From positions 230,774-294,773 of IMG/VR virus record IMGVR_UViG_3300044731_002337: 64,000 bases of DNA. One strand, given 5' to 3'. A model generated the notes under the pieces. That model did not search any database and had not been told where the DNA came from. It worked only from the letters and a program-made list of their open reading frames with translations. The number at the start of each line of letters is the position of its first letter. Position 1 is the stretch's first letter. Shown one piece after another: positions 3,187 through 61,878 of the stretch. Position numbers and translations under genes: made by a program.

Positions 3187-3909
3187 TTATTTTGTGAGGA
3201 TGGATGGAGGTCTAATAGTACGATTGAAAAAGGTGATGACTGAAGCAGAAGTGGAGTCTTTATGCCATGAGTTACCGGTGATTGTATGAATATAAGGTCC
3301 GTCAAGAGTTTGTAATAATGGGGATAAGTGAATACGGTATTTCTTGTGATTAGGTAATGAATGATAGGCATCTGAAATAATACCTGGACCAGTGGTAAAT
3401 AATACATGGAAATAATAAATACGTTGTAATACTGATTTATAAGGATTGTATTTAAAAGGGGTGTATAGGAGGTACCAAACATGAACCCAAAAGGAGTGTT
3501 CAGGTATGGACCACATGAATGCATTGGTAAGATTTTGTGTGCCTACATCGCTATCCTTTTTACATATGCCGAGAACAAGTTGTTCATTCTGAAGTTTGGG
3601 GTAAAGTTCGGTGAAGAATTCCTTGGTGGGTACATTATCAAAGTCTGAATAGATGCCGCCATAATGATAGAGTACAAAGTAACGAAAGGTGTCGGCCCGT
3701 TGAATGCCATACGTATAGGCTCTAAATTTGGATAAAAACCAAGGGAAATGGGTAGCAATGAATTGATCAATGGCTTGGTCATCCCAATACATATACGTGA
3801 ATCCATATTCTTGTGCTAAGCGAGTCCATGTATGGTGTGAGTCAACCCATTGTGTTAAAAGAGTGTCAGGTGGACCTTTCCATGTCTGATGAATAATTTT
3901 GGGAATCAT
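3187..3909 (-). CDS. GT32 glycosyltransferase, SUR1/Och1 (MIPC synthase-like) family
   Basis: IPKIIHQTWK, FPWFL, IQRADTFRYFVLYHYGGIYSDFD (DxD), LTNAFM, TTGPG, GNSWH. Confidence 0.9.
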   Translation of the reverse strand: MIPKIIHQTWKGPPDTLLTQWVDSHHTWTRLAQEYGFTYMYWDDQAIDQFIATHFPWFLSKFRAYTYGIQRADTFRYFVLYHYGGIYSDFDNVPTKEFFTELYPKLQNEQLVLGICKKDSDVGTQNLTNAFMWSIPEHSFWVHVWYLLYTPFKYNPYKSVLQRIYYFHVLFTTGPGIISDAYHSLPNHKKYRIHLSPLLQTLDGPYIHTITGNSWHKDSTSASVITFFNRTIRPPSILTK

Positions 3910-4631
3910 GGTGTTTTTATTATGGCTTGAGAACGTGTCAGAATATCATGAAGCGCTTGAGTAGCGGACGCATTATTCGCTGGAGGAATGGCAAACATGG
4001 CAAACATCTTTTCCGTATCAAACATATTCACATGGTCCACAAAGAGAATCAATAAGATGCACACTACATGACGAAGATCCAATATAGAGGCTTGGGCAAT
4101 AATTTGAACTAGTGTCCCTAGAGGAATAGAGGAGTACGTGGTCATGAATTGATGCACCTGTGGCGATAAGGACTCTTTCCACCCTTCCAGTTTCATGGTT
4201 TTGATGAGATTATCATACATGTCATTAGTGGGGTCAGGAATGTCGTGAAGCATTTTCACCAAGTTGGTAATAATCGTATCATGTACATTGGGAAGCTGGA
4301 GGATACAGGGTTTGAAAATGGTATCAAAGTGTCGACAAAGGGTCTTGATAGCCGAATCATATTGTAAAGATTCTTCCAATGAGAGTGGCGGTTCGGTTTG
4401 GGTTGAATGATTGCGCCATTCCAACCAATCATATCCTCGATGATAAGCTAAATCATGAACCAATTGAGGAAATCCAAGGTGTTCTGAACCAAAATAGTTC
4501 TCCATCGCTTGGATAGGTGTGGTTTGGGCATAGGCTTTCAATACAGTCGAAAGAGAAACATGTGATGGAGGTATTGCTAACAATTGATCACCACTCTGAA
4601 TCCACATGAGAAGTAGTGGTAGTTTGTACAT
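3906..4631 (-). CDS. divergent Skp1-like (BTB/POZ) protein
   Basis: N-terminal IQSGDQ...LSTVLK and C-terminal LVQIIAQASILDLRHVV...TEKMFAMFAIP resemble Skp1 (LxSSD...SxTIK; LILAANYLDIKGL...PEEIRKTFNI). Confidence 0.6.
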   Translation of the reverse strand: MYKLPLLLMWIQSGDQLLAIPPSHVSLSTVLKAYAQTTPIQAMENYFGSEHLGFPQLVHDLAYHRGYDWLEWRNHSTQTEPPLSLEESLQYDSAIKTLCRHFDTIFKPCILQLPNVHDTIITNLVKMLHDIPDPTNDMYDNLIKTMKLEGWKESLSPQVHQFMTTYSSIPLGTLVQIIAQASILDLRHVVCILLILFVDHVNMFDTEKMFAMFAIPPANNASATQALHDILTRSQAIIKTP

Positions 4632-4923
4632 TGTGATCTTCTTGATTTGATCGGGAGATTGCCAAGTCTATCATATTAGCTAAATGAATATTAGAATGTA
4701 CGTGTGTTAATCTAGAATGTAACCATATAAAGCTATAATGAATAATTAATAAAATACTACCCAAGATATAAAAGATGGAAATATCAAATAGGGATGCAAG
4801 TCGTTGAACTGTAGTAGTAGTGCCTTCATGTGTTGATGTTGTTGTTGTTGCCATCGTAGTAGAAGAGTTCTGATTTCCATGGATAGGATCAGTTGTTGCA
4901 AAATAATCAGGTGCAAGGTTCAT
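4588..4923 (-). CDS. small membrane protein
   Basis: Thr-rich N-terminus, one hydrophobic segment, upstream A-tract on the minus strand. Confidence 0.55.
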   Translation of the reverse strand: MNLAPDYFATTDPIHGNQNSSTTMATTTTSTHEGTTTTVQRLASLFDISIFYILGSILLIIHYSFIWLHSRLTHVHSNIHLANMIDLAISRSNQEDHNVQTTTTSHVDSEW

Positions 4924-4982
4924 AGTTTTTTTTTTTATTCAATAAAGAAATATAAAACAAAAAAAGTAAAGGGGATTACGTG

Positions 4983-5570
4983 ATGGATTTACCGTATGAG
5001 TTTAAAAAAGTAACACTGGATAAGGATCATCGATGGACATATAAGGAGATGATGTTTTTCTTGGTATGGGTTCAAATTGTATCTGTATGTAATCTGGTAC
5101 TATTTGCAGGTACATGGATGGTGGAAAGTGATCGTTTTTGGATGTCAGTAACTAATTTACTCTTGAGATGGTTGTTATTATTGTTTACAGTGATAAGTAT
5201 TATTTTAGGAGTATTTATTATGACCCGACCTAAATCTGATTTCCAATTTGAATGGTGTTATCGAGTGAATGCGCCACAGGATATGGTTGATGATTACATG
5301 AATTACGATGTGTTGACGGATAATCCTTCTTATAGACCTCCATTGAATGCTTCGGTGAATTGGAAGAAGCAGAATCCTACACCGGCGCCAACGATAAGGT
5401 TTGATGCCTTGGAGAAAAATGTGGAGGAGTTGCAAGTGGAGTTGGAAGATAAAGAGGATCAATGGAGACGTGGAGATGTTTCCGATCTCATTTTACAACA
5501 ATCGAAACAAAAAAATACAGAAAAATCAAAGAACCAGAAGAAGAAGACGAAGAAGAAGAACATAAGATGA
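4983..5570 (+). CDS. two-TM membrane protein with coiled-coil and basic tail
   Basis: Two hydrophobic helices; ATGA overlap with the next gene. Confidence 0.65.
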   Translation: MDLPYEFKKVTLDKDHRWTYKEMMFFLVWVQIVSVCNLVLFAGTWMVESDRFWMSVTNLLLRWLLLLFTVISIILGVFIMTRPKSDFQFEWCYRVNAPQDMVDDYMNYDVLTDNPSYRPPLNASVNWKKQNPTPAPTIRFDALEKNVEELQVELEDKEDQWRRGDVSDLILQQSKQKNTEKSKNQKKKTKKKNIR

Positions 5571-7303: not shown

Positions 7304-7325
7304 ATACTAGAAAAAAAAAAAGGAA

Positions 7326-7757
7326 ATGGAAAAACATAATGTGAATAAAATGTGTATTCGAAATAATCCGGGTTCGAAAGAGATGATTCAGTCTGAAAAG
7401 AGGGTTCCGATTACCTTGTTACCTGCGAATACGAGTGATGCTATAGGTCGGTTAAAGAGTAATCCTAAATTTGAGAGTCTAGTTTTACGTACCCAGTTTG
7501 CGGCAGATACAAATACATTAAAGCATGTAAAGCCGATGATGTCATTGTATACGAATTATCCGAAAGAGGTAAAATTATTGTTTTCCGATTCGGCACTAGA
7601 ACGAGTGAAGCGGATAATTCAGGAGTATCCCTTGTTGGAGAGAAATGTCCACGCCGCGAGAGATAGGGATTGTGAACAAGTACCTGAAGGGGGGAGAAGC
7701 GGGTGGAGGAGGAGGAGGATACTTCCCCAAATTTATTATGCGGGGGGTTCTAGCTAG
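7326..7757 (+). CDS. hypothetical protein
   Basis: ORF preceded by an A11 tract; overlaps the next ORF. Confidence 0.55.
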   Translation: MEKHNVNKMCIRNNPGSKEMIQSEKRVPITLLPANTSDAIGRLKSNPKFESLVLRTQFAADTNTLKHVKPMMSLYTNYPKEVKLLFSDSALERVKRIIQEYPLLERNVHAARDRDCEQVPEGGRSGWRRRRILPQIYYAGGSS

Positions 7758-8523
7758 TCTCTTTCATGATGAGACAAGAGTAGCTAAAATCTTTCATGAG
7801 TTACGCAAGGCAGAATCGGGTGATACATGGATGGTGGAAATGCTCATGAACTTGAAAATTATGAACTTTGGAGGAACTTTATCCCCTTTCATACTCAAGT
7901 GTGAAAGCATACACGAAGAAGAACGTGTCATTGTATTTCCTTATTGCCATCAAATAGATATCATTCACTATATGGAGCGTAACCGTTGTTCGGAAGAGCT
8001 CCTGTTGAAATGGGTGGACCAAATGATTGATGCAGTGTATTGTTTACATGAACATCTCGAGATTGCGCATATGGACTTATCATTGGAAAACTTCATGTTG
8101 ACTCAAGATTTGGAAATACGTTTGGGGGATTTTGCACAAGCGTGTCATGCGAATTCAGTGTTAACTATTACGGGGTCAATTGGCAAGAAATCGTATGGGG
8201 CATATGAGATATTTGCGCGAGATACGGTGTATAATCCAAAGACTTGTGATATGTGGTCATTAGGCATTTGCATCTTTGCCATGTTTTTCAATTGCCTATT
8301 ATGGTTTTCTCATCGCGACTCTCGATTTATCGGTTTTATTCATAATCAAGGCCAGTTTTGGGAAAAGTTGGAAGAAGCAATCAAACAAGTAAAAGGGGAA
8401 CAACAAGATGTGATCACTTTCAAGATCCTCAAGTTGGTGAAAAGACTTGTGGTGTTGAATCCGGATGAACGCATGACCATTAAGGAACTAAAACAAGAAA
8501 TGATGACGATGATAATAAAATAA
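7645..8523 (+). CDS. Ser/Thr protein kinase (divergent)
   Basis: RVAKIF, HMDLSLENFML, GDFAQA, GKKSYGAYE, CDMWSLGI, NPDERMTI; start uncertain. Confidence 0.88.
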   Translation: MSTPREIGIVNKYLKGGEAGGGGGGYFPKFIMRGVLASLFHDETRVAKIFHELRKAESGDTWMVEMLMNLKIMNFGGTLSPFILKCESIHEEERVIVFPYCHQIDIIHYMERNRCSEELLLKWVDQMIDAVYCLHEHLEIAHMDLSLENFMLTQDLEIRLGDFAQACHANSVLTITGSIGKKSYGAYEIFARDTVYNPKTCDMWSLGICIFAMFFNCLLWFSHRDSRFIGFIHNQGQFWEKLEEAIKQVKGEQQDVITFKILKLVKRLVVLNPDERMTIKELKQEMMTMIIK

Positions 8524-8532
8524 AAACGGGAA

Positions 8533-13231: not shown

Positions 13232-14407
13232 ATGATAGTAGGATATACGACGGGGACTTTTGATTACCTGCATGAAGGACATATTCGTATTTTACGCGGT
13301 ATGAGAAAGTTGTGTGATCGTCTGATAGTAGGATTGACCACTGATGAATTGGCGGTGAAGCAAAAGAGGGCAACTATCATGTCATTTGATCATCGTCGGG
13401 TATTGTTGGAGAGTTGTAAGTGGGTATCTCATGTAGTGGAGCATCATGGGGAGTCTAAAATTGTAGCGTATGAAAAGTTACGGTTTCATAAATTATTTAT
13501 TGGGGATGATTATTTTGGATCTCGAGAGTATCTTGAGGTTAATGAAAAGTATCCTGAAGTAGAGATTGTGGTGATTCCAAGGACTTCCAATGTGTGTACA
13601 TCGCAGTTATGGGAGAGTTTAAATAAACGTGTGTTACATGACATGAGTATTATGCATATGGGTGTAGGATCAAGTGTCATTCGTCGCATTGGTGAACGTT
13701 TGGTGACCAAGACAATTAATTTAGGGTACACTGAAGTCTATGGTGAGCGAACAGCCAATGTATATCATTTTCCTATTCCTGTACCTCGTAATTGGGCCAG
13801 AGTGAATACTCCAGCAGTACATCCAAATTATCCTGGAGTGAATGGATTCCGGGAGATTGATGGAGGTGATATGTGGCATGGAAAGTCATGGTATCCTTAT
13901 GATGAGCATCGTGTCATTTATCAATCACCTCAAAAGTGGAGTTGTGTCTATCCTTTGGAGGAGAAGAAGCGTCCAAGTATGGTAGTGGAATTGATCGGTC
14001 GTTATGGTGGTGATACATTAGCACATTGGGTGGAATTCAAGTATCATCGTGATGAATTTCGAAGGTTGATTAAGCAAGTTTTAAGGATCATTATGGAGGA
14101 ATTGGCGCCTCAAGATTTTGTGCATGGTGATGTGCATTGTAGGAATGTGTTGGTGGATGGTCGTGGACAAGTCAGTTTAATTGATTTTGGGTGGTGCACG
14201 CATGGATCGTTTGTGATGCAGAGTGATGAACGTGAGGAGCATCAAAGTCGAGTGAAGGATTTATTTGATGTGATGCATTTTCGAGATAGTGTGGAAAAGT
14301 TATTGGTGGAGGAATTGGGATTAAGTTCGTTGTGGGGCGTTCATGCGACGGATTTTCTGACGTTTTCGAATGTACACAATGATGATAGGGAGCCACATGC
14401 AGAGTAG
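13232..14407 (+). CDS. cytidylyltransferase (TagD/ECT-like) fused to a kinase-like phosphotransferase domain
   Basis: GYTTGTFDYLHEGH (HxGH), LIVGLTTD, IGDDY, PRTSNVCTS; C-terminal FVHGDVHCRNVLV...LIDFGW. Confidence 0.85.
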   Translation: MIVGYTTGTFDYLHEGHIRILRGMRKLCDRLIVGLTTDELAVKQKRATIMSFDHRRVLLESCKWVSHVVEHHGESKIVAYEKLRFHKLFIGDDYFGSREYLEVNEKYPEVEIVVIPRTSNVCTSQLWESLNKRVLHDMSIMHMGVGSSVIRRIGERLVTKTINLGYTEVYGERTANVYHFPIPVPRNWARVNTPAVHPNYPGVNGFREIDGGDMWHGKSWYPYDEHRVIYQSPQKWSCVYPLEEKKRPSMVVELIGRYGGDTLAHWVEFKYHRDEFRRLIKQVLRIIMEELAPQDFVHGDVHCRNVLVDGRGQVSLIDFGWCTHGSFVMQSDEREEHQSRVKDLFDVMHFRDSVEKLLVEELGLSSLWGVHATDFLTFSNVHNDDREPHAE

Positions 14408-37921: not shown

Positions 37922-38617
37922 ATGTGGTCAGCGTTACCGGTTCGTTCGTCACAGAAGAGAAGAAGGGAAGTAGAGGAGTATCAAGCGCCTCCAAGGTTAC
38001 GTAATTGTCAAGTGGGAGATGAACAATTTACAGATGAAGATGGACGTATTGCATCGGAAGAAGAGGAGGAGGAAGAAGAGGAAGAAGAGGAGGAAGGATC
38101 TGATTCTTCTTATGTGGATGGGGAAGAAGATGACGAAGAAGAGGAGGAGGAAACGAGTGATTCGGAAGATGGGGATGAAGTGGAGGAGGAGGATGATGTG
38201 AATGAGTTATTGGTCGAGGCGAATAAGATTAAGGATAGGGTGGATGTGGAGACAAGGGGTAAAAGGGAAAGAGTTCGTCGTGAAGCATGGTTTCGTAAGG
38301 TAGTTAAAATATGGGAGGAATGGGAAGCGAGTAAGACGGAATTTAAGATTGTGAATCATAAGCCTCGTGGAACATTTTGGGGGAAGCATGAACCAGATTA
38401 TGCAATATGTGTACGTGGAGGTGGTAATGACTATTATGTATATATATTAGAATCGGGTGCCTTGCGATGTGAGTGTGAAGATTATGAAACGATGGAGATT
38501 CAAGAGATGGTACAGCACTTAAAAGAAAAACATCAACATGGCGTGTCAGCGTCTAGTACAAAAATATGTGGAGGAAACCAAACAGATGATGCCAGCGCTG
38601 AGTGCCTCCACAAGTGA
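37922..38617 (+). CDS. acidic (poly-Glu) hypothetical protein
   Basis: Long E/D tract followed by a globular region. Confidence 0.6.
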   Translation: MWSALPVRSSQKRRREVEEYQAPPRLRNCQVGDEQFTDEDGRIASEEEEEEEEEEEEEGSDSSYVDGEEDDEEEEEETSDSEDGDEVEEEDDVNELLVEANKIKDRVDVETRGKRERVRREAWFRKVVKIWEEWEASKTEFKIVNHKPRGTFWGKHEPDYAICVRGGGNDYYVYILESGALRCECEDYETMEIQEMVQHLKEKHQHGVSASSTKICGGNQTDDASAECLHK

Positions 38618-39248
38618 TAAAACAAATTGGTTATTAACTGAAAATTGGAAGTGTTATGTAGGTGGTACATCCTATGATATGAGTAATTGTCATAATGTAA
38701 ATGATGCAGAACCTGTATTCAAACTTCATCAATCTGGCTTCTTTTCATGGATCAATGAACGTGGAATGCAATGTATTAATCATATTACAGGAGTATTTAC
38801 TCAAGTGAAGGATAATAGTTCAGGTGGATATACGTATCAGCCACCATCAGCTACGAGTTCGGGTACATCACCTCATGAATGTTGGCAAGAATGTATGTAT
38901 GTCACAAGAGAAAAGAGTGCAACAGAGCCTTGTGTGAATTGTATTATGTTACAATTGAGTAGTAAACCAAGTTTATGTGTCCCTTCGATTACGAGGGAGA
39001 TGATGACGGATACGATTGAGTGTCAGATGATGTTGATACCAGAGTTATTAACGGAGGAGGCGGAGATTGATTTTCCTCAAGTGTGGCATATATTGCAAAC
39101 GGATTCACTTAAGAGTGGTGGATTGGATACGACTACTTTGATTCTTATTATTGTCTTTTCCATTGTGGGGGCTTTGATTACTTATATTCTATTTGACCGT
39201 TACTGGTTTCATGCATCATTGGCGACATTGAGTAAAAAAGATTCATAA
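38538..39248 (+). CDS. Cys-rich protein with C-terminal TM (probable virion membrane protein)
   Basis: Multiple Cys including CxxC and CxxxC; C-terminal TM LILIIVFSIVGALITYILF. Confidence 0.65.
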   Translation: MACQRLVQKYVEETKQMMPALSASTSDKTNWLLTENWKCYVGGTSYDMSNCHNVNDAEPVFKLHQSGFFSWINERGMQCINHITGVFTQVKDNSSGGYTYQPPSATSSGTSPHECWQECMYVTREKSATEPCVNCIMLQLSSKPSLCVPSITREMMTDTIECQMMLIPELLTEEAEIDFPQVWHILQTDSLKSGGLDTTTLILIIVFSIVGALITYILFDRYWFHASLATLSKKDS

Positions 39249-39985
39249 CCGAGTACATAAGTTGTATTGATGGATTGATAATGAATGTAACATGGCATAC
39301 TTACAATACATGGTTTGACTGTTTTCTTTGGAGTGGATGGTTGTTGTTGTTCATGGAGCCGTATCATGAGGTATCGATGTTTATCTTCTTGTATCATGGG
39401 GAAAAAGGGTATAGTTTCTTGTAGGTGGGGGAATTGCATCATGTAAGGTGTACCATGAGTGATAGTGAGTTGTCGAAAGGGTGAAGGTAGATGTGGTGGT
39501 AGAACAGGTGGATTCATGGGGATAGTCGCCGTAATGGTGGGTAAAGGTGGAGTATGTAAAGGATTATGAGGAATAATCTTGTGTTGTGTATACGGCCATT
39601 GAGGTTCATGTTTGATCATATAGTCAATGTAGAGTGACATGAACATGGTGAGTAATGGTTTAGAGTTGCCACAACGAAAGGAAAAAATGCTGCGATTATC
39701 ACGGGAGACATCAAATAGCTTTTCGATGGAGCAATGATGGTGGAGCAAGTAGAAGGTGAGATGTTGGTATAATAAGTTGGGGTCACATTTTTGGAAGCGT
39801 TGAATATCATGGGGTGTTAATTGGTAGCGATGCCAATAAGTAGGTAGCATGCATGGTGTAGGTGTAAAAGAAATGGAAAGAGTGAATTGGGCACGAGCAC
39901 GTGGTGTGACAATATGATGTTGTCGATAATGACGTTTACCTTCTTCCAACTCATAATGTAAAATAATAGTCTCTGGTATATCCAT
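39209..39985 (-). CDS. hypothetical protein
   Basis: ORF tiles the gene map. Confidence 0.6.
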   Translation of the reverse strand: MDIPETIILHYELEEGKRHYRQHHIVTPRARAQFTLSISFTPTPCMLPTYWHRYQLTPHDIQRFQKCDPNLLYQHLTFYLLHHHCSIEKLFDVSRDNRSIFSFRCGNSKPLLTMFMSLYIDYMIKHEPQWPYTQHKIIPHNPLHTPPLPTITATIPMNPPVLPPHLPSPFRQLTITHGTPYMMQFPHLQETIPFFPMIQEDKHRYLMIRLHEQQQPSTPKKTVKPCIVSMPCYIHYQSINTTYVLGYESFLLNVANDA

Positions 39986-40003
39986 TTTATTTGTTTGTTT
40001 GGA

Positions 40004-41068
40004 TTAATTCGACTCCTCTTCATCTAAACACAATTCCTTTTCCCATTCATTCATGAGTTGAGATATCTCATCATTTGCATGACCTGAAAATAGACTTGAT
40101 TCTTGCATAACTTTTTGCATAGACGCATCATCCCCATCTTTCATAGCTTCCATCACACGCTGAATTTCATGGCTATTCTCAGACCACAAGTATTTCTTCA
40201 CTGTATCTTGAAGCTCTGTATCTGAAAGCCATACAGTCTTCAATAATTCGATATGATTCGCAGGTAACCATTTCAAACAATCATCATAATTTTGAGTCGA
40301 AAAGGCTTGATATACATACACGCGTGACTTGTGATCTGGTAAGCTGATAGGTGAAGAGGAAGAAGAAGAAGAAGAAGAATTGGTATTTGTCTTTTTAACC
40401 CAATCATCCCAAGGATCAGGTACATTGGATTGTATGGCGGAGAGAACATATTGGATGGATTCAAAGATGAAGGCGACTTTCGATTCCCCTTGTTTCATGA
40501 GTCGTTTGAATAGCCGTTGAAATTCCTTGTTATGTTGTAGACAATTCCTAACGTGTCCCATGAGATCACCAGCAGAAATGCTTTGATTATCCTTGAGAAG
40601 AATGGTGAGAATTTTACGTACCTCTGGAATATTATTATAAATGGAATTCATAATGGATAGACGATAAATATCAACAAAGATATTCCAAAAAATTCCTTTG
40701 CTGGTATGATCAAATAAACTATAACGGTATACGAAATCATAACCTGGTGCATCAAAAATCATGGCAAAGATATCAATGCCTTCATTGTAAGTGAAAAATT
40801 GTACATCTCGAGCGAGTAATAAATTGGAGGCATCTTTACAGCTGGCAAAGAAACGTGTACATGCAACACTGGTCGTAGGATCTGCTTGAATGATCTTATA
40901 CCATTTCTGATAAGCCTCATTTGCAATCTCTAATTGTTCTTGTGCTTTCACATCTTCCTCAAAGTCGGGTGCTTGTAATCCCTTGTTTTGAGCTAAGATA
41001 AATTCAAGAAAGTTTTTATTGAAATTGACTTCAAGGTTGGAAATGCAATTATCGAGTGAGCTTGTCAT
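40004..41068 (-). CDS. hypothetical alpha-helical protein
   Basis: 354-aa ORF with an upstream A-rich leader. Confidence 0.7.
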   Translation of the reverse strand: MTSSLDNCISNLEVNFNKNFLEFILAQNKGLQAPDFEEDVKAQEQLEIANEAYQKWYKIIQADPTTSVACTRFFASCKDASNLLLARDVQFFTYNEGIDIFAMIFDAPGYDFVYRYSLFDHTSKGIFWNIFVDIYRLSIMNSIYNNIPEVRKILTILLKDNQSISAGDLMGHVRNCLQHNKEFQRLFKRLMKQGESKVAFIFESIQYVLSAIQSNVPDPWDDWVKKTNTNSSSSSSSSSPISLPDHKSRVYVYQAFSTQNYDDCLKWLPANHIELLKTVWLSDTELQDTVKKYLWSENSHEIQRVMEAMKDGDDASMQKVMQESSLFSGHANDEISQLMNEWEKELCLDEEESN

Positions 41069-41104: not shown

Positions 41105-42235
41105 TTATTTCTTCATTTCCATTTTTTTTTGTGTTTGACAAGCACATACTTGCGAATAATAACGTGGTAGAATGACCCATACAAGAATACCCCAAAGCAA
41201 TAGTAAACCAATAACTAATAGTGTCATCCATGTATAACTAGCATGCCATCCAGAGAATACATGATTGGTGACAGTAGGTGAAATATGTCGTGTTAGTAGT
41301 ACTGAAGGTGTCCATTCTAAATCGACCTGTATTGGATAATGATCTGAAAGGGTATTTTCTATGGTCCAGGTATGATGTAATAATCCAATGGGAGTTTGAT
41401 AAGGTGGAACTTGGGGAATGATAATGGTTTGTGATAGATGTATGGGTTGGAACTCATTGGTGAGTAAAAGGGCATAATCAATCCATTCTTGTGGACAGCA
41501 AGGACATTGATGCATAGACCAATATTCATCAACACATCCATGAGGGTATTGAGCATTGGTATAATATTCAATATTATCTAACCCTACTAAAGGATTTTTA
41601 GTTGGATCCATGGTAAATTCTTGGGTTGATGATGATGATGATGATGATAAGGGTATATTGGTAGCTTGAAGGATTTGTAAGACATGTTGATTTTGGGAAT
41701 TGGGAATATTAAAGTCGCCAATAATCAATGTAGGCTCATGGGGAGGAATATGATGCTGATCAATAAAGTGATGCAATTGTTGGAGCTGTTCAAGACGAAT
41801 CGAATGGGCAGTTGGAGTTTGCCATGCATGCAAATGTGTCATAAATAGATGAACTGAAGTAGATGAATGAACATCCAATTGTACATACAACATATTCTTA
41901 TCTGCTAAACAATCTGAGCCTTCACAATCAGTACGATAAGAAATATCATTGGTCGCAAGAATAGGGTGTTTACTATATACGGTAATACCAGCACGAACAA
42001 TGTTGATATTGATACGTTGTTCGGTAAAGTGTGAGAAGCCTAAAGAGATCAAGGTTTTACGAAGTTCTAATTCTAAATGAATGGGGATAAGTTCTGCAAA
42101 CATGAATACGTCAACCTCATGATGGTAAGAGGTAATCCATTTGGCAATTTGGGTGAGACGTTCTTCTTGGGCGATAAAACGTAAAGGTTTGGGAACTGGC
42201 ATCATGACATTGAGGAATACAATACGTAATTTCAT
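41105..42235 (-). CDS. EEP-family phosphodiesterase, sphingomyelinase C-like, with C-terminal TM
   Basis: FLNV, FAEL, YSKHPI, DCLADK, THLHA, GDFNI, WIDY, LSDHYPI, then a TM. Confidence 0.82.
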   Translation of the reverse strand: MKLRIVFLNVMMPVPKPLRFIAQEERLTQIAKWITSYHHEVDVFMFAELIPIHLELELRKTLISLGFSHFTEQRININIVRAGITVYSKHPILATNDISYRTDCEGSDCLADKNMLYVQLDVHSSTSVHLFMTHLHAWQTPTAHSIRLEQLQQLHHFIDQHHIPPHEPTLIIGDFNIPNSQNQHVLQILQATNIPLSSSSSSSTQEFTMDPTKNPLVGLDNIEYYTNAQYPHGCVDEYWSMHQCPCCPQEWIDYALLLTNEFQPIHLSQTIIIPQVPPYQTPIGLLHHTWTIENTLSDHYPIQVDLEWTPSVLLTRHISPTVTNHVFSGWHASYTWMTLLVIGLLLLWGILVWVILPRYYSQVCACQTQKKMEMKK

Positions 42236-50656: not shown

Positions 50657-51184
50657 ATGTCTTATGCATTGTTTAATGGTGTATGGGTATTAGATAAGAG
50701 TAGGAATTCCAATTTAAGCCCTCTATTAGAAGCTATGGGTAGAAGTCGTTTTGAAGTGAGTTGTGTTTCTTCAGCAGATGAAATTTTTACATTAGAGTTA
50801 ATAACACCTAAACATGGCCATAAAGATGCGATTACGTTTCATAAAAAGGTGGAAATTTATTTACAAGATACCGTATTGAAATTGTTCGCCATGTTTAAGC
50901 CCAGTATCACCCGAATCAAGTATGAAAATCAATTCTTGTGTGATGGTGTATCACGAGATCATCCGAATGATTCCAAATCGTTTGGTTCATGTAATGCAGT
51001 ATGTTATATTACAGCAGATAATCATATTATTATTCGATGGTATATGAATGATAAACGTCGCATTATGATATCAGATCATTTCATTCATTCCGATGGAAAT
51101 CTCATTGTGGATATTTCTATTTCTCATCAAGGGAAAAGCACAATCGAGGTCCAATCTAGAAAAGTATACATAAAGAAAAATTAG
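50657..51184 (+). CDS. FABP/calycin-like beta-barrel protein
   Basis: FNGVWVLDKSRNSNLSPLLEAMG (FxGxWxL..S.N....L.ALG) and terminal RKVYIKK. Confidence 0.6.
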   Translation: MSYALFNGVWVLDKSRNSNLSPLLEAMGRSRFEVSCVSSADEIFTLELITPKHGHKDAITFHKKVEIYLQDTVLKLFAMFKPSITRIKYENQFLCDGVSRDHPNDSKSFGSCNAVCYITADNHIIIRWYMNDKRRIMISDHFIHSDGNLIVDISISHQGKSTIEVQSRKVYIKKN

Positions 51185-51192
51185 AATCTATA

Positions 51193-52880: not shown

Positions 52881-53023
52881 TGATTAGTAACTCTTTTTTT
52901 GTTATTATCTTATCTCAGTACTATCCCAATTCATTAAACCCATTCTGATCATGATGAGGAAAACAAGTAATAATTAAGGAATCAAAATAACAGAAAAAAA
53001 AAAGAAATAATACGAAAAAAAGT

Positions 53024-57266: not shown

Positions 57267-57300
57267 TAAAAAAAAAGAACAAAAAAATATATTAATTACC

Positions 57301-58020: not shown

Positions 58021-58034
58021 TTTTTTTTTGTTTC

Positions 58035-58159
58035 CATCAAGGAGGTTACCTAAATTGCATCAAGGAGGTTACCTAAATTGCATCAAGGAGGTTACCTAAA
58101 TTGCATCAAGGAGGTTACCTAAATTGCATCAAGGAGGTTACCTAAATTGCATCAAGGAG
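58035..58159. repeat. perfect 23-bp tandem array (catcaaggaggttacctaaattg) x5 plus a 10-nt partial unit
   Basis: Units start at 58035, 58058, 58081, 58104, 58127 and 58150 (partial); no spacers. Confidence 0.97.
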
Positions 58160-59171
58160 ACACCAATTGAAGTCGTGATAACAATTCAAGTGTCACTTTT
58201 GGATGTTCGCACTTGTATTTCCCTTGATGATACATGACACTCTTAATTAATTGATTGGCTTCCATCTCTTCCTGAGTGACTATTGGCCCCATATTTCTCA
58301 ATGCATGTCGTGGCATAGTGATTAATGGTGGTGGAATAGCGGTCGACAAAGATCCCAATGAACGATGATACGATAACATATTACAATACACCATTGTTGC
58401 GGAAGAACGAACTTGCGGATCATAACGTAACATTGGTCGAATCACATGTTTCCATAACTTGTCATGAGGAAAATAAAGATCTAAAAATTGTAAATAGACC
58501 TCTTTATAATCTCTGGTCAAGTACCAATAGATTTGTTCATATGATAATAGACAATATTCTTTTGACATAATCTTACGTAATTGGTTATATCGCCACCAAC
58601 CAGGTTTATAATAACTATACAATAATCCCAAGGTAAAAATAATTTCTTTTTGTAATAATACTTCCAACCATAATATCCCTAATGCCCAAATATCTGAATT
58701 ACAATGACGGGTAATCATTCCAGCTACCTCTTGCAATTCAGGTGGTCGATAACGTACATGATACTCTTCCACCCATAATGAACTATGACTCTGCATTCGA
58801 GCATGACCATAATCAATCAATATCCCCCTTTGATCTTTTGTCATACATATATTATCCAACTTGATATCATAATGAATCACATGCAACGCATTATGCAAAT
58901 ACACCAATCCTGATATCACATCCCAAAAAATCTGAAACCAATTTACATCCATATTATATTGTAATGTCGCATGATAACGTGGCATCTTCATTGTCAAATA
59001 GTCATCTTGATACCCCAACTCATACACCTTGTTCAAATGTGGGTGATCCCCTGTTTGCAATAAAATATACGATTCTACAATAAACGTTGAATGACATTTT
59101 ATATGTATATGCTTTGATACATGCTTTCGATACAAATCTACATATCCATAATTACAACGTATTCTCTTCAT
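58152..59171 (-). CDS. Ser/Thr protein kinase (CDK-like YRPPE)
   Basis: NYGYV, IHYDIKLDNI, LIDYG, YRPPE, DIWALG, MLRYDPQVR. Confidence 0.85.
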   Translation of the reverse strand: MKRIRCNYGYVDLYRKHVSKHIHIKCHSTFIVESYILLQTGDHPHLNKVYELGYQDDYLTMKMPRYHATLQYNMDVNWFQIFWDVISGLVYLHNALHVIHYDIKLDNICMTKDQRGILIDYGHARMQSHSSLWVEEYHVRYRPPELQEVAGMITRHCNSDIWALGILWLEVLLQKEIIFTLGLLYSYYKPGWWRYNQLRKIMSKEYCLLSYEQIYWYLTRDYKEVYLQFLDLYFPHDKLWKHVIRPMLRYDPQVRSSATMVYCNMLSYHRSLGSLSTAIPPPLITMPRHALRNMGPIVTQEEMEANQLIKSVMYHQGKYKCEHPKVTLELLSRLQLVSP

Positions 59172-59258
59172 TTTGTTCTTTTTAATTATTATCCCTCCTT
59201 CTCCCTCTGAAAAAAAAAGACAAATCAACAAATATAAAAAAAAAAATAAACCAATACT

Positions 59259-60695
59259 ATGGCTGTTACAGGTCCACAAATAGCAACTATTGCTGTTGTA
59301 TGTAGCGTCATCTTCGCTTTACTCTTATTATTGCTATTTCGCAAATGGAATAACAGAAGAAATACAACACGACACAATTCATTTGCTAGAACACAAAAAC
59401 CACAAAGAATAACCAACAATGAACGAACTAGAGATATATCCAACACCACACAAAAACTGTCTGGTGTAGCATCTACTGGTTCGGGTAGAAATGATTCTGA
59501 CCCCACAAAAAACTTGTCTGATGGTAATGATTCTGGTGTAGCATCTGCTGTGTTGCGTAAAAGAAAATCTGACCATAATAGTGAATCTGATAAACCATGG
59601 AGACTCTCTAAACGTAACAAAAATCAAGAAACACATGAACAAAGAGTACCAAACCAACCAAATTCGATTGATATACCATTGACCTTAGTGCAGCCAGTTC
59701 AACCATCACATGCACTTGAAATTCGTCCAAATCAAGAACGAAACATGACGAAATTTGTAAGACTTTTCTGGTCTGATACATATAAGAATGTATTTGAACC
59801 TATTGTCACTGGCATCAACCAATTTTTAGGGTTCGTATTTGGGGGCAGAAGACCACGAAAAGCAGAAAATTCATTAGTAGAAACAGTCATGGTACATTTT
59901 GCACAACACGATGGTATGATAAGGTATCCACCACTATATCCACTCATTACTCTAGCTTATAATATCGTTGATCATAATTCCTTGGAGATGTACTTTTGTT
60001 ATATTATCACATGTCTGTATCAATCGAGTAATCTTTACATAATCACTCAAGCAATAATCACTAGTGAGTTAAATAAGAATTCACCGATTGTTCAAGCCGC
60101 AATTGATCTTTTTCCTTTTTTGCAATTGTATAAACGTAGAGGGAATATTCTCTTCCCAGAATTTGAAAAACTTATTCGCTATTGGATTGAATTGAACAAA
60201 TCCAAACTCAACTCGGACAGAATGATGATCGAAAAAGTCAATAGTGATAGTGAGTCAATACCATCTTCATCTACTTCCCCTGAGTCATCTGTTCTTGTTG
60301 CGCATCCCCCTATTGTTCAAGCGTACATCAACTATCTACAAACAGATATACATAATGATCCGGATCAGATTGATTTTGTACCATCACATTATGATCGACT
60401 CCAGATTGAGGATTATGCCCAACCAAATCAACTATCACGTAATAATCAACTCCAGATTGAGGGTTATGAACCATCAAATCAACATGTTAGTAGACGAGAA
60501 CACCCAACCTATTACAAAGTCATCTGTACAATAGAAGGGATTATAGTTGTTACTCTCATGGGCGCTCTTATCACATTACCAAATCGAGACGTGTATTATA
60601 CCAACACGGAACTTTCTTCAGATCTCCTAATAGCCTACAAAAACTTGATGTTCTTTCTTTTCGGACAATGGGGTAATGGACGTTATTACCAATGA
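59259..60695 (+). CDS. N-terminally TM-anchored hypothetical protein
   Basis: TM followed by a basic stretch and disordered linker; internal short duplications (SGVAS x2, LQIE.Y x2). Confidence 0.7.
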   Translation: MAVTGPQIATIAVVCSVIFALLLLLLFRKWNNRRNTTRHNSFARTQKPQRITNNERTRDISNTTQKLSGVASTGSGRNDSDPTKNLSDGNDSGVASAVLRKRKSDHNSESDKPWRLSKRNKNQETHEQRVPNQPNSIDIPLTLVQPVQPSHALEIRPNQERNMTKFVRLFWSDTYKNVFEPIVTGINQFLGFVFGGRRPRKAENSLVETVMVHFAQHDGMIRYPPLYPLITLAYNIVDHNSLEMYFCYIITCLYQSSNLYIITQAIITSELNKNSPIVQAAIDLFPFLQLYKRRGNILFPEFEKLIRYWIELNKSKLNSDRMMIEKVNSDSESIPSSSTSPESSVLVAHPPIVQAYINYLQTDIHNDPDQIDFVPSHYDRLQIEDYAQPNQLSRNNQLQIEGYEPSNQHVSRREHPTYYKVICTIEGIIVVTLMGALITLPNRDVYYTNTELSSDLLIAYKNLMFFLFGQWGNGRYYQ

Positions 60696-60778
60696 TCATA
60701 TCCATGGTATTTGTGAAAAGGGAATAAAACAAGAAAAGAAAAGAAACAAAGAAAGAAAGAAAAAAAAAGGAAGAAAAC

Positions 60779-60958
60779 ATGTCATCCTGGGAAGATTGGA
60801 CTTATTTTGGTCTCATTATTGCTTTATTCACATTGTTACTCTTTATTGCTATATGCTCCTTATGGCGTTGCTTCTTCCCCCTCATTCATTGCCGTATATG
60901 TCTACGTCAATTACAATGTAGCAATCCACAATGCAATAATAATAATAATCGAATATAA
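60779..60958 (+). CDS. 59-aa single-TM Cys-rich microprotein (not in the ORF track)
   Basis: MSSWEDWTYFGLIIALFTLLLFIAICSLWRCFFPLIHCRICLRQLQCSNPQCNNNNNRI; ATG directly follows a ~55-nt A-rich leader. Confidence 0.65.
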   Translation: MSSWEDWTYFGLIIALFTLLLFIAICSLWRCFFPLIHCRICLRQLQCSNPQCNNNNNRI

Positions 60959-61011
60959 TTCTTAAAAAAAAAGAAAAGAAAAAGAAACATAATCATCATT
61001 ATCGTCACCTC

Positions 61012-61878
61012 ATGAATACCTTGTTCACATGTGCTGTGATTCTCATGTTTTTACTCCTGATTCTTTACCTCTACATGATTACTCACACCACATATCGACC
61101 TTGGATCATGATCATGAGCTACCTAGATACAAACCTCAAAAACCTCTTTAGATCACTCGATAAAGATCCACGAATCATCAATCAAACTGCCATTCACATT
61201 AAAGCAGCAGACATCATCATGACAACACAGCAACAGCAACAGCAACAACAGCGGCAGAAAGAAGTTTGGGTATGTTTCCATGGAAAAGGAGGATCTGCTA
61301 ATCGTTTTGCTGAAATTAAAAATCGTATTTGTCCTGATCCACATGTTGAATTATACATGTATGAATATCCGGGACATGGATTCCGTTATCGTACTTCTTC
61401 CTTAGGTGATATGGAAACATGGATTGTTGACATTTCCACTTTCTACTATTATTTACGACATATCTATCCCCCTACTACCAAAATTGTCTTTTGGGGCTTC
61501 TCATGGGGCGGATACATTGCCTCCCAAGTCGCTGCTCGATTAGCTATCACCCCAACACCCGTTGATCAAGTCCTATTAATCAGCCCTTTTTCTCATTATT
61601 CAGATGTCGGTACACTAGGCAAACTACTCTCCACCCGAACCAATCATCTCCTCCATAACTTACGCATCCCTCATCACCAACAATTACAACATTGGCATGT
61701 ACTCCTACTACGCAGCGATAATACCATCAACCAATACTCAAAAGATAAATGGAAACCTCTCCATTCCATTACCGTCATCCATGATAAACCATACTATGAT
61801 AACACTACACACAACACCGTCATTGGATCCCCTGAATACTTACAATGGCTATCTACTATTCGACTCTCACCACAATAA
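61012..61878 (+). CDS. alpha/beta hydrolase (ABHD13/17-like) with N-terminal TM
   Basis: CFHGKGG, YEYPGHG, GFSWGG nucleophile elbow, SDNTI (Asp), THN (His). Confidence 0.85.
   Translation: MNTLFTCAVILMFLLLILYLYMITHTTYRPWIMIMSYLDTNLKNLFRSLDKDPRIINQTAIHIKAADIIMTTQQQQQQQQRQKEVWVCFHGKGGSANRFAEIKNRICPDPHVELYMYEYPGHGFRYRTSSLGDMETWIVDISTFYYYLRHIYPPTTKIVFWGFSWGGYIASQVAARLAITPTPVDQVLLISPFSHYSDVGTLGKLLSTRTNHLLHNLRIPHHQQLQHWHVLLLRSDNTINQYSKDKWKPLHSITVIHDKPYYDNTTHNTVIGSPEYLQWLSTIRLSPQ

What the first reader, a model, noticed from the sequence alone, without database searches (positions are those of the whole stretch)
3187..61878. Dispersed sphingolipid/phospholipid remodelling toolkit
Seen: a SUR1-like GT32 (3187-3909), a membrane-anchored sphingomyelinase-like EEP enzyme (41105-42235), a cytidylyltransferase-kinase fusion (13232-14407), an FABP-like barrel (50657-51184) and an ABHD-like hydrolase (61012-61878). 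Established: yeast Sur1 mannosylates inositol-phosphoceramide, Isc1/SMases release ceramide, and coccolithoviruses encode de novo sphingolipid synthesis. Inference: this virus may instead remodel lipid head groups (cleave, activate with CDP, glycosylate, carry) for its envelope. The genes are not clustered, so a joint pathway is unproven.
Basis: inference. Interest (0 to 1): 0.62.

Follow-up and report, generated by a model that had tools for sequence, protein, structure and literature searches.

The report
Giant-virus lipid and glycoconjugate enzyme genes

Summary
All five ORFs are real, conserved genes, and each domain call holds.

- **GT32 (3187-3909):** Pfam Gly_transf_sug.
- **Sphingomyelinase (41105-42235):** a tail-anchored neutral-sphingomyelinase-family enzyme with every catalytic residue. 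The clade profile hits Bacillus SMase C at 1e-56; the next family is at 3e-6.
- **Fusion (13232-14407):** a TagD/CCT/ECT-like cytidylyltransferase joined to a protein-kinase-like domain.
- **FABP-fold barrel (50657-51184):** model pLDDT 91.
- **Alpha/beta hydrolase (61012-61878):** N-terminally anchored.

The window is the last 64 kb of a 295-kb Nucleocytoviricota contig.

The joint "cleave, activate, glycosylate, carry" pathway is only partly supported.

- **Sphingolipid arm strengthened:** the contig, outside the window, also holds a second SMase-like paralog, a mini PAP2_C (sphingomyelin/IPC-synthase-type) protein and a fatty-acid hydroxylase.
- **CDP arm reassigned:** the contig has no CDP-alcohol phosphatidyltransferase but does have a LicD/fukutin-family phosphotransferase. 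In three of four distant contigs the fusion gene lies directly beside a LicD gene, once with a 41%-identical GT32 next to it.
- **Meaning:** fusion, LicD and GT32 most likely add a phospho-alcohol to a glycolipid or glycan.
- **GT32 placement:** it nests in a metagenomic, tail-anchored clade, not with the fungal GT32s, one of which a source names MIPC synthase.

Substrates, host and any envelope role are unknown.

The parts
3187..3909 (-). GT32 glycosyltransferase (240 aa). It has the N-terminal IPKIIHQTW motif and DFD at residues 89-91, with no signal peptide or transmembrane helix.
   Evidence: PF04488 at 5.8e-16. Och1 (9n3s) at 1.4e-5. A 72% identical syntenic orthologue is in the sister virus (L102). 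A 41% orthologue sits next to LicD and the fusion in L122. In the tree its clade nests inside tail-anchored metagenomic GT32s and is separate from the fungal/algal clade.
13232..14407 (+). Cytidylyltransferase (residues 1-135) fused to a protein-kinase-like domain (about 138-384); 391 aa in all.
   Evidence: PF01467 at 6.2e-16. TagD (1coz) at 1.8e-16, ECT (3elb) at 8e-13. Model pLDDT 92. N-domain versus TagD: Z 18.6, rmsd 1.3 A, 32% identity. Kinase domain: generic ePK fold, Z 12-13, with WbdD among the Foldseek hits. Motifs: HEGH 14-17, RTS 117. K160, D300, N305 and D318 are invariant in 30 homologues; H298, F319 and G320 are nearly so. More than 50 metagenome clusters share the architecture.
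41105..42235 (-). Tail-anchored neutral-sphingomyelinase-family phosphodiesterase (376 aa).
   Evidence: E48, H134, D174, N176, D298 and H299 are invariant in 18 homologues, and N9 is present. Clade profile versus PDB: SMase C 1.2e-56 over its full length, SMPD3 2.5e-17, SMPD2 2e-13, next family TDP2 3e-6. Transmembrane helix at 338-356, conserved across the viral clade. A Cys-rich insert (CPCC at 244) is conserved.
38538..41068 (.). Three genes without a known family: 354 aa (-), 258 aa (-) and 236 aa (+, with a C-terminal transmembrane helix). They stay next to the SMase gene in three lineages.
   Evidence: Synteny is kept in L010/L015 (34-68% identity) and in L012 (38-43% identity). No Pfam hit. 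Transmembrane scan.
50657..51184 (+). FABP/iLBP-fold beta-barrel protein (175 aa).
   Evidence: No Pfam, NCBIfam or PDB sequence match. 62 representative relatives at E <= 1e-3. Model pLDDT 91; Foldseek gives FABP3/4, CRABP2 and NanoLuc at E about 2e-7. Atlas structural hit to FABP, TM 0.69/0.85. K169 is invariant and Y171 nearly invariant in the last strand. A 56% identical orthologue is in the sister virus.
61012..61878 (+). N-terminally anchored alpha/beta hydrolase (288 aa).
   Evidence: Hydrolase_4 at 7e-12, Abhydrolase_1 at 2.2e-9. GFSWG at 162-166 and a transmembrane helix at 5-23. Only weak solved relatives, E >= 0.08. No relative found in IMG/VR.

Best explanation
The window is the right-hand 64 kb of a 295-kb Nucleocytoviricota contig. 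The five genes are functional, but they belong to at least two separate modules.

Module A is head-group cleavage. The tail-anchored enzyme at 41105-42235 is a Mg-dependent phosphodiesterase of the neutral-sphingomyelinase family. Its catalytic domain would face the cytosol, and it would release a ceramide (or lyso-lipid) backbone and a phospho-head group from a sphingophospholipid such as SM, CPE or IPC. Elsewhere in the contig the virus also encodes a second SMase-like paralog with a signal-like N-terminus, a 187-aa PAP2_C protein of the sphingomyelin/IPC-synthase type, and a fatty-acid hydroxylase. Sphingolipid head-group turnover is therefore a real theme.

Module B is phospho-alcohol decoration. 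The fusion at 13232-14407 makes a CDP-activated alcohol (CDP-glycerol, -ribitol, -choline or -ethanolamine). A LicD/fukutin-family transferase, encoded 28 kb upstream and outside the window, passes the phospho-alcohol to a sugar. That sugar is built in part by the GT32 enzyme at 3187-3909. The acceptor could be a glycolipid or a glycan. The kinase half either supplies the phosphorylated alcohol or phosphorylates the acceptor sugar.

The FABP-fold protein and the anchored hydrolase plausibly handle hydrophobic ligands, but they cannot be assigned to either module.

Shown: family memberships, catalytic motifs, folds, membrane anchors, gene neighbourhoods. Inferred: substrates, topology, acceptor, and any link between the modules.
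For: Virus identity: Rpb1, Rpb2, polB, A32, D5-like, Erv1 and RNR genes.

SMase family:
- Searches place it in the family.
- Second SMase-like paralog: 7cne at 2.9e-11, TIGR03395 at 1.9e-14.
- PAP2_C protein: 29.8 bits against a 27-bit cut-off, with SGH and HYTxD motifs, and Atlas score 0.96 to short SMS-like/IPC-synthase clusters.
- FA_hydroxylase: 56.9 bits with His boxes.

Fusion-LicD link:
- Own LicD gene: PF04991 at 64 bits, N-terminal transmembrane helix, DxD motif, FKRP as the only solved relative, and NCBIfam best hit Mf1.
- LicD sits directly beside the fusion in L014, L122 and L123. These fusions are 33-36% identical to ours, so they are independent lineages. It is absent from L124.
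- L122 has the order fusion-LicD-GT32-GT6, with a GT32 41% identical to ours.
- No PF01066 in the contig, while 13 of 14 control genomes ring.
- GT32 and LicD are the only glycan-type families seen in the Pfam census of the contig.
- The sister virus keeps all of these genes at syntenic places.
Against: - No biochemistry, expression or host data.
- The contig is estimated to be only 55% complete. A CDP-alcohol phosphatidyltransferase or more glycosyltransferases could lie in the missing part, or the host's could be used.
- LicD adjacency rests on four neighbourhoods only.
- One GT32 relative (L127) has neither LicD nor the fusion within 10 kb.
- In this genome the three module-B genes are 9-28 kb apart.
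- The kinase domain resembles ordinary protein kinases at least as much as small-molecule kinases. Choline kinase and APH structures are not among the top matches.
- The PAP2_C hit is only just above threshold, and its nearest clusters are bacterial.
- Three of the four Pfam census lists were cut at 25 families, so 5 families went unseen.
Confidence: 0.55

Rival explanations
1. One reading: SMase cleaves a head group, the fusion re-activates it as a CDP-derivative, GT32 (Sur1-like) glycosylates the sphingolipid, the FABP-like protein carries it and the hydrolase trims it, all to build a virion envelope.
For: All five families are compatible with lipid work. The SMase, fusion and LicD homologues lie within 10 kb of each other in L014. 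Further sphingolipid genes are in the contig. Relatives of the GT32 are tail-anchored, hence membrane-bound. JGI's automatic naming calls three relatives 'IPC mannosyltransferase catalytic subunit'. The LicD family includes a glycolipid phosphocholine transferase, Mf1 (PMC11982090).
Against: No enzyme that would put a CDP-head group back on ceramide or DAG was found; PF01066 is absent. The SMase and the fusion/GT32 genes never sit together except in L014. The SMase has its own conserved neighbours. GT32 falls outside the fungal GT32 clade that holds the MIPC-synthase-named sequence and has no secretory signal, so it would not meet IPC in the Golgi lumen. There is no evidence of an envelope.
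Confidence: 0.12
2. The fusion boosts the host Kennedy pathway by making CDP-ethanolamine or CDP-choline, which host phosphotransferases turn into PE/PC. This would supply membrane, and possibly PE for the virus's own ATG8 homologue. LicD and GT32 would be unrelated.
For: ECT and CCT are clear structural and sequence relatives: 3elb at 8e-13, and Z 15.9 for 4xsv and 3hl4. A viral ATG8 gene lies next to LicD here and in the sister virus, and 2 kb from the fusion in L124. Host enzymes could complete the pathway.
Against: TagD (glycerol-3-phosphate) is the closest relative by every measure. The kinase half shows no likeness to choline/ethanolamine kinases: there is no PF01633 hit and it has a generic ePK fold. 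LicD adjacency in 3 of 4 neighbourhoods is left unexplained.
Confidence: 0.13
3. There is no module at all. The five genes are independent acquisitions with separate roles: SMase for ceramide signalling, cell death or membrane curvature; the kinase half as a protein kinase; GT32 for glycosylating virion proteins; the barrel and the hydrolase for unrelated ligands.
For: The genes are dispersed. Most of the contig's genes have no family, and it carries many protein kinases. The kinase domain looks like an ordinary ePK. Co-occurrence in the sister virus follows from collinearity alone. LicD sits among core genes, next to a probable mRNA triphosphatase.
Against: Repeated fusion-LicD adjacency in distant lineages, and one fusion-LicD-GT32-GT6 row, are hard to explain without functional coupling. 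The covalent fusion of cytidylyltransferase and kinase is conserved in more than 50 clusters.
Confidence: 0.2

Closest known systems
Bacterial sphingomyelinase C / S. aureus beta-hemolysin and eukaryotic neutral SMases (SMPD2, SMPD3, yeast Isc1)
   Same: EEP fold. All metal-binding and catalytic residues are present (N, E, H, D, N, D, H). The clade profile aligns over the full length of Bacillus SMase C at 1.2e-56. It has a C-terminal membrane anchor, as nSMase1/Isc1 do (the latter from my own knowledge).
   Different: About 25-30% identity only. A conserved Cys-rich insert (C..CxCC) and a single tail anchor. It is encoded by a virus. The substrate is unknown; most protists lack sphingomyelin.
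TagD / CCT / ECT cytidylyltransferases
   Same: HxGH and RTxxxST motifs. The model superposes on TagD at 1.3-1.6 A with 31-32% identity.
   Different: Fused to a C-terminal protein-kinase-like domain of about 250 aa. I did not find this fusion described in the searchable literature.
Lic-1 pathway (LicA kinase, LicC cytidylyltransferase, LicD transferase) and M. fermentans Mf1
   Same: The same logic: kinase, then CDP-alcohol, then a LicD-family transferase onto a sugar (PMC10434233; PMC11982090). LicD is the recurring neighbour of the fusion.
   Different: LicC has a different nucleotidyltransferase fold and LicA is a choline-kinase-type enzyme (own knowledge). Here the two activities sit in one chain of other families, and the donor alcohol is unknown.
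Mammalian ISPD - fukutin/FKRP - POMK pathway on alpha-dystroglycan
   Same: A LicD-family transferase, with FKRP as the only solved relative at 1.9e-4. It uses a CDP-alditol made by a dedicated cytidylyltransferase (PMC4873967). A protein-kinase-like enzyme phosphorylates the glycan (POMK; own knowledge).
   Different: ISPD belongs to another cytidylyltransferase family. No dystroglycan-like acceptor is known here. The similarity is one of logic, not of orthology.
GT32 enzymes: Och1, Sur1/Csh1 (MIPC synthase), A4GALT
   Same: Gly_transf_sug domain with the DxD motif.
   Different: 240 aa with no membrane anchor. It nests in a metagenomic clade of short tail-anchored GT32s, apart from the fungal/algal clade that contains a sequence named MIPC synthase.
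Coccolithovirus (EhV) sphingolipid biosynthesis
   Different: EhV encodes de novo synthesis (SPT and others). Here the Pfam census did not list Aminotran_1_2 or TLC-type ceramide synthase; it found cleavage/transfer-type enzymes instead. I did not run dedicated SPT or ceramide-synthase searches.
FABP / iLBP family and Oplophorus luciferase (NanoLuc)
   Same: Ten-stranded barrel with a helix-turn-helix lid, TM by target 0.77-0.83. A KxY motif in the last strand sits where FABPs have RxY (the FABP motif is from my own knowledge).
   Different: 175 aa, about 15% identity, no Pfam hit. BFVD holds no viral counterpart.

Membership tests
Neutral sphingomyelinase family (EEP superfamily) | The catalytic and metal-binding residues of SMase C (Asn, Glu, His, Asp, Asn, Asp-His) are all present. 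| tested here: met
   N9, E48, H134, D174, N176, D298 and H299 are present. All but the N-terminal Asn are invariant in 18 homologues; two truncated rows lack that region.
Neutral sphingomyelinase family (EEP superfamily) | Closer to SMases than to any other EEP subfamily (nucleases, inositol 5-phosphatases, TDP2). | tested here: met
   Clade profile versus PDB: SMase C 1.2e-56, beta-hemolysin 1e-50, SMPD3 2.5e-17, SMPD2 2e-13. The first non-SMase is TDP2 at 3e-6. No DNase I, APE1 or 5-phosphatase is listed at E <= 0.01.
Neutral sphingomyelinase family (EEP superfamily) | Hydrolyses a sphingophospholipid. | not testable with these tools
   This needs an enzyme assay. The NCBIfam equivalog score of 58 bits is far below the 248-bit cut-off, so the protein is not an orthologue of bacterial SMase C.
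CCT/ECT/TagD cytidylyltransferases | HxGH and RTxGISTT-type motifs on the cytidylyltransferase fold. | tested here: met
   HEGH at 14-17; RTSNVCTS from 117, with family consensus RTxxxSTS. TagD Z 18.6, rmsd 1.3 A.
CCT/ECT/TagD cytidylyltransferases | Substrate identity (glycerol-3-P versus phosphocholine versus phosphoethanolamine). | tested here: inconclusive
   TagD ranks first (1.8e-16; TIGR01518 82 bits against a 165-bit cut-off), then ECT, then CCT. No equivalog threshold is reached.
Choline/ethanolamine kinase (head-group kinase) | Match to the Choline_kinase/APH family, or to its structures, ahead of protein kinases. | tested here: not met
   Only weak APH (4.6e-7), ABC1 and Pkinase hits around the catalytic loop. 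Structure search lists ordinary protein kinases (Z 12-13) and WbdD. The catalytic K160, D300, N305 and D318 are invariant, so it is probably an active kinase of unknown substrate.
Sur1/Csh1 MIPC synthase | Groups with fungal Sur1-type GT32 sequences rather than with other GT32s. | tested here: not met
   In a 114-row tree the P0001 clade (aLRT 100) lies inside a metagenomic tail-anchored clade (aLRT 99). The named fungal/algal sequences, including the Fusarium 'MIPC synthase', form another clade. Verified Sur1 and Och1 references were not available, so this is a partial test.
Sur1/Csh1 MIPC synthase | Lumenal catalytic domain, i.e. an N-terminal signal or anchor plus C-terminal transmembrane helices. 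| tested here: not met
   P0001 has no hydrophobic segment. Relatives at 39-48% identity have only a C-terminal helix. The Haematococcus and Penicillium rows have both an N- and a C-terminal helix; the other named fungal rows show only one.
GT32 (Gly_transf_sug) | Pfam domain over the cut-off, with a DxD motif. | tested here: met
   59.4 bits against a 23-bit cut-off; DFD at 89-91.
LicD / fukutin family (partner gene, outside the window) | Pfam LicD over the cut-off, with a DxD motif. | tested here: met
   64 bits against a 22.6-bit cut-off. D116, D117 and D119 of the WDDDID motif are invariant in 4 homologues. FKRP at 1.9e-4.
FABP / iLBP | Ten-stranded beta-barrel with a helical lid. | tested here: met
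   Model pLDDT 91. More than 300 PDB matches at E <= 1e-3; those listed are FABPs, CRABPs and NanoLuc.
FABP / iLBP | Sequence membership (Pfam Lipocalin/Lipocalin_7). | tested here: not met
   No Pfam hit for any of 50 family members, and no profile hit in the PDB.
Alpha/beta hydrolase | GxSxG nucleophile elbow on a Pfam-recognised fold. | tested here: met
   GFSWG at 162-166; Hydrolase_4 at 45.6 bits against a 27-bit cut-off. The Asp and His of the triad could not be assigned because no homologues were available.
Sphingomyelin/IPC synthase-type PAP2_C (outside the window) | Pfam PAP2_C over the cut-off, with SGH and HYTxD motifs. | tested here: met
   29.8 bits against a 27-bit cut-off; SGH at 125 and HYTID at 162. 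Atlas nearest clusters carry PAP2_C in 75-93% of members, score 0.96. The margin is narrow.

The most novel reading that the evidence does not exclude
A lineage of uncultured giant viruses carries its own Lic/fukutin-like pathway. It consists of a single-chain kinase-cytidylyltransferase, a LicD-family transferase and a tail-anchored-type GT32, and it builds a phospho-alcohol-decorated glycolipid or virion glycan. Alongside it is a virus-encoded sphingomyelinase / SMS-like pair that exchanges sphingolipid head groups. Together these would give infected cells or virions a virus-specific membrane surface chemistry.
Probability: 0.3. Interest if true: 0.7.

Novelty: new variant of a known kind. 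Interest (0 to 1): 0.5.

Why it matters
Giant viruses are known to rewire host lipids. The coccolithovirus sphingolipid pathway is the standard example, and it works by de novo synthesis.

Here the evidence points to two other strategies in an uncultured lineage:
- cleavage and transfer of sphingolipid head groups by viral SMase-type and PAP2_C-type enzymes;
- a compact CDP-alcohol/LicD module of the kind bacteria use for phosphocholine mimicry and animals use for dystroglycan.

The full-text library returned no paper pairing LicD with giant viruses and only one preprint noting a neutral sphingomyelinase on a eukaryotic-virus contig.

If confirmed, the fusion enzyme and its LicD partner would be a simple, testable system for how zwitterionic or polyol-phosphate decorations are added to glycoconjugates. 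A 2025 paper calls that step poorly understood (PMC11982090).

The practical lesson for annotation is that 'glycerol-3-phosphate cytidylyltransferase' genes in giant viruses should not be filed under phospholipid synthesis by default.

Tried and rejected
- The genome search on whole records of relatives failed; the loci are not held. Co-occurrence had to be read from +/-10 kb neighbourhoods.
- The search for related loci with single proteins found nothing: P0003, P0001 and P0005. The FABP-family alignment had no stretch conserved enough to scan.
- The fusion alignment in IMG/VR returned one true fusion, from the sister virus. The other 79 kept loci were single-domain TagD-like genes on other viral contigs.
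- PF04451 (NCLDV capsid) was not found in the contig. This is uninformative, because no control genome rang and the contig is incomplete.
- PF01066 was absent.
- The P0004 profile had no PDB sequence hit and no BFVD structural counterpart. Cluster look-ups gave no names.
- Rejected: the second EEP gene as an AP endonuclease. SMase C is its best match; ExoIII models score only 1e-3.
- Rejected: the 277-aa and 327-aa LicD neighbours as module members. The 277-aa protein is probably the mRNA triphosphatase, so their co-location reflects core-gene synteny.

Full report
**What the window is**

The 64-kb window is bases 230,774-294,773 of a single 294,773-bp IMG/VR virus record (JGI 3300044731, Ga0453692_0000001). 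The record is classed as linear, and CheckV estimates it 55% complete. Identical proteins occur on contigs from JGI 3300059473 (299 kb), JGI 3300037541 and Logan SRR27430816, so this is a recurring natural virus.

The contig encodes the following:
- Replication and packaging: DNA polymerase B, A32 packaging ATPase, a D5-like primase-helicase.
- Transcription and mRNA handling: RNA polymerase Rpb1 and Rpb2, Dcp2/NUDIX.
- Nucleotide metabolism: both ribonucleotide reductase subunits, DHFR-TS.
- Others: Erv1, many protein kinases and ankyrin proteins.

It is therefore a member of the Nucleocytoviricota. I did not resolve the lineage or the host. PF04451 (major capsid protein) was not found, but that search rang in no control genome and the contig is incomplete.

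**Check of the observation**

All five coordinates are ATG-started ORFs and all five domain calls were reproduced.

- **GT32 (3187-3909, minus strand).** PF04488 at 5.8e-16. Its best solved relative is Och1 at 1.4e-5, and it carries a DFD motif at residues 89-91.
- **EEP enzyme (41105-42235, minus strand).** PF03372 at 2.6e-8. Its only NCBIfam match is the sphingomyelinase model. All its solved relatives are SMase C or beta-hemolysin. It has a C-terminal hydrophobic helix at residues 338-356.
- **Fusion (13232-14407, plus strand).** CTP_transf_like at 6.2e-16 (TagD 1.8e-16, ECT 8e-13), plus weak kinase-family hits around a HGDVHCRN...DFG catalytic core.
- **50657-51184 (plus strand).** No family hit. 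An AlphaFold model built on 50 relatives has pLDDT 91 and pTM 0.87. It matches FABP3/4, CRABP2 and NanoLuc at E about 2e-7, TM by target 0.77-0.83. The ESM Atlas's own model agrees.
- **Hydrolase (61012-61878, plus strand).** An alpha/beta hydrolase (Hydrolase_4 at 7e-12) with a GFSWG elbow and an N-terminal anchor.

A sister virus contig is collinear with the window at 40-70% protein identity (JGI 3300048686, Ga0485328_0000009, 156.6 kb; also IMGVR_UViG_3300048686_001337). It carries syntenic orthologues of the GT32 (72%), the fusion (64%), the SMase (54%) and the FABP-like gene (56%). The hydrolase would fall at or beyond that contig's end.

**The sphingomyelinase is solid, and it is not alone**

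In 18 homologues the residues E48, H134, D174, N176, D298 and H299 are invariant. A profile of this clade aligns over the full length of Bacillus SMase C at 1.2e-56. It then hits human SMPD3 (2.5e-17) and SMPD2 (2e-13). The first hit outside the family is TDP2 at 3e-6.

The viral clade shares a C-terminal tail anchor and a Cys-rich insert.

The SMase gene keeps the same three unknown neighbours in three lineages: 354, 258 and 236 aa, at 38538-41068.

A Pfam census of all ORFs of 90 aa or more outside the window, followed by targeted searches, found further lipid-type genes:
- **Second SMase-like paralog**, genome 36,997-37,872. It matches 7cne at 2.9e-11 and TIGR03395 at 1.9e-14, and has a signal-like N-terminus.
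- **A 187-aa PAP2_C protein**, genome 133,997-134,557. It scores 29.8 bits against a 27-bit cut-off and has SGH and HYTID motifs. Its nearest Atlas clusters are short 'sphingomyelin synthase-like' and IPC-synthase proteins at score 0.96.
- **A fatty-acid hydroxylase-family protein** with histidine boxes, genome about 192.6-193.2 kb.

**The CDP arm points somewhere else**

The contig has no CDP-alcohol phosphatidyltransferase (PF01066). This is the enzyme that would return a CDP-activated head group to a lipid, and the same search rang in 13 of 14 control genomes.

The contig does have a LicD-family gene at genome 215,038-215,898, which is 28 kb upstream of the fusion and outside the window. 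Its features:
- PF04991 at 64 bits.
- An N-terminal anchor.
- Invariant D116, D117 and D119 within a WDDDID motif.
- FKRP as its only solved relative, 1.9e-4.
- NCBIfam best hit is the Mycoplasma glycolipid phosphocholine transferase Mf1, far below cut-off.

The cytidylyltransferase-kinase architecture occurs in more than 50 metagenomic protein clusters. I looked at four distant neighbourhoods, where the fusions are 33-38% identical to ours:
- **L014:** LicD is divergently adjacent to the fusion. An SMase homologue lies 8 kb away.
- **L122:** the row is fusion, LicD, GT32, GT6. The GT32 is 41% identical to the window's.
- **L123:** LicD lies directly upstream of the fusion. A distant GT32 is 6.5 kb away and a class-3 lipase 2 kb away.
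- **L124:** no LicD within 10 kb, but an ATG8 gene 2 kb away.

The sister virus keeps LicD at the syntenic place.

A counter-example: a 39% GT32 relative on a 190-kb contig has neither LicD nor the fusion within 10 kb.

In the Pfam census, GT32 and LicD are the only glycan-type families detected in the whole contig (three lists were cut at 25 families).

**Structure of the fusion**

The model (pLDDT 92) shows a TagD-like N-domain: Z 18.6, rmsd 1.3 A, 32% identity. CCT and ECT come close behind at Z about 16.

The C-terminal part is a 250-residue protein-kinase-like domain. Its best matches are ordinary protein kinases (Z 12-13). In Foldseek it also matches WbdD, a bifunctional kinase-methyltransferase whose kinase, to my knowledge, phosphorylates a sugar of the O-antigen. 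Choline kinase and APH structures are not among the top matches, so 'head-group kinase' is not shown.

K160, D300, N305 and D318 are invariant, so the domain is probably an active kinase.

**GT32 placement**

In a quick maximum-likelihood tree of 114 GT32 sequences, the window's protein and its close relatives form a clade with aLRT 100. None of them has a transmembrane helix. This clade nests inside a clade of short, C-terminally anchored metagenomic GT32s (aLRT 99).

The named fungal and algal GT32s form a separate clade. It includes a Fusarium sequence that one source calls MIPC synthase.

Verified Sur1 and Och1 references were not available, so 'SUR1-like' stands only at family level. The lack of any secretory signal argues against action on IPC in the Golgi lumen.

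**Most likely mechanism**

I read the five genes as two modules plus two unassigned accessories.

*Module A.* A cytosol-facing, tail-anchored SMase-type phosphodiesterase cleaves a sphingophospholipid head group. The second SMase-like paralog, the PAP2_C protein and the hydroxylase would act on the same lipid class.

*Module B.* The fusion makes a CDP-alcohol. The membrane-anchored LicD enzyme transfers the phospho-alcohol to a sugar that GT32 helps to build. Known LicD-family acceptors are:
- teichoic acid and LPS (Lic-1 pathway, PMC10434233);
- the O-mannosyl glycan of dystroglycan, via FKTN/FKRP with CDP-ribitol (PMC4873967);
- a glucosyl-diacylglycerol, via Mf1, which also uses CDP-ethanolamine (PMC11982090).

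The family assignments, motifs, folds, anchors and neighbourhoods are shown. The donor alcohol, the acceptor, the topology and any coupling between modules A and B are inferred.

**What weakens this reading**
- There are only four independent neighbourhoods.
- The contig is incomplete.
- The kinase domain has no substrate signature.
- The PAP2_C score is marginal.
- The three module-B genes are dispersed over 30 kb in this genome.
- LicD sits beside a probable mRNA triphosphatase and an ATG8 homologue, that is, among unrelated genes.

**Novelty**

The families are all known, and giant-virus lipid genes are known. In the searchable literature I found:
- one preprint noting a neutral sphingomyelinase on a eukaryotic-virus contig;
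- one giant-virus paper listing a glycerol-3-phosphate cytidylyltransferase under lipid genes;
- no paper that mentions LicD together with giant viruses.

The single-chain cytidylyltransferase-kinase with a LicD partner, and the SMase/PAP2_C pair, are best described as new variants of known kinds. I give moderate interest, 0.5.

Noticed in passing
whole contig; sign change at window about 51,000-53,000: There is a strong strand-wide GC skew that does not follow gene orientation. Third-codon-position skew is +0.46 in plus-strand genes and -0.29 in minus-strand genes over genome 1-282 kb. The sign reverses for the last 12 kb or so. Gene orientation is balanced (122 plus, 120 minus). This looks like a replication- or repair-linked mutational asymmetry with a switch point near the right end.
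   Followed up: partly
outside the window: genome 57-116 kb (tubulin) and 176-230 kb (kinesin): The contig encodes a tubulin (PF00091 at 3.6e-43, Tubulin_C at 1.6e-19) and a kinesin motor (PF00225 at 1.5e-79). It also has PP2C, PARG, DHFR-TS and an Aminotran_5 enzyme.
   Followed up: no
outside the window: genome 214,641-215,057 (-), next to LicD: A viral ATG8 homologue (PF02991 at 1.7e-15) lies directly downstream of LicD, and does so in the sister virus too. Another ATG8 gene lies 2 kb from the fusion gene in the distant contig L124. ATG8 is conjugated to phosphatidylethanolamine, so a link to CDP-ethanolamine supply is conceivable but untested.
   Followed up: partly
window 41105-42235 (residues about 233-252): A Cys-rich insert (YPxGC...C.CCPQEW) is conserved across the viral SMase clade and absent from the three most distant (non-viral-like) homologues in the alignment. 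It may be a metal site or a disulfide knot.
   Followed up: no
window 38538-41068: Three family-less genes (354, 258 and 236 aa; the last has a C-terminal transmembrane helix) stay beside the SMase gene in three lineages down to about 40% identity. They are candidates for functional partners.
   Followed up: partly
window 3187-3909 and its relatives: GT32 relatives at 39-48% identity end in a transmembrane helix. The window's protein and its 56-73% relatives stop just before it, which suggests a secondary loss of the tail anchor.
   Followed up: partly
window 7645-8523, 9263-10123, 48551-49903, 58152-59279; also 21154-21483 and 62921-63985: The window has at least four protein-kinase genes, an HNH endonuclease (21154-21483) and an ankyrin-repeat protein at the right end. 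Most other ORFs have no Pfam family.
   Followed up: no
contig left end (genome 1-110): A 27-bp unit (AGTTACCTCTTCGAATGAACAATAAGA) is repeated four times in tandem at the very start of the contig. No terminal inverted repeat with the right end was found.
   Followed up: no
outside the window: genome 0-57 kb: Two proteins match the Kdo/WaaP lipopolysaccharide-kinase family (best 8.8e-8). There are also a GNAT acetyltransferase, a T4-type RNA ligase and a UDG. Three ORFs in separate parts of the contig (0-57, 57-116 and 117-175 kb) carry the Peptidase_S74 chaperone domain; one of them is a 1100-aa protein with a weak legume-lectin-like hit.
   Followed up: no
window 61012-61878 (residues 73-80): A run of eight glutamines sits between the membrane anchor and the hydrolase domain. 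It fits the C-rich coding strand of the skew-reversed tail region.
   Followed up: no
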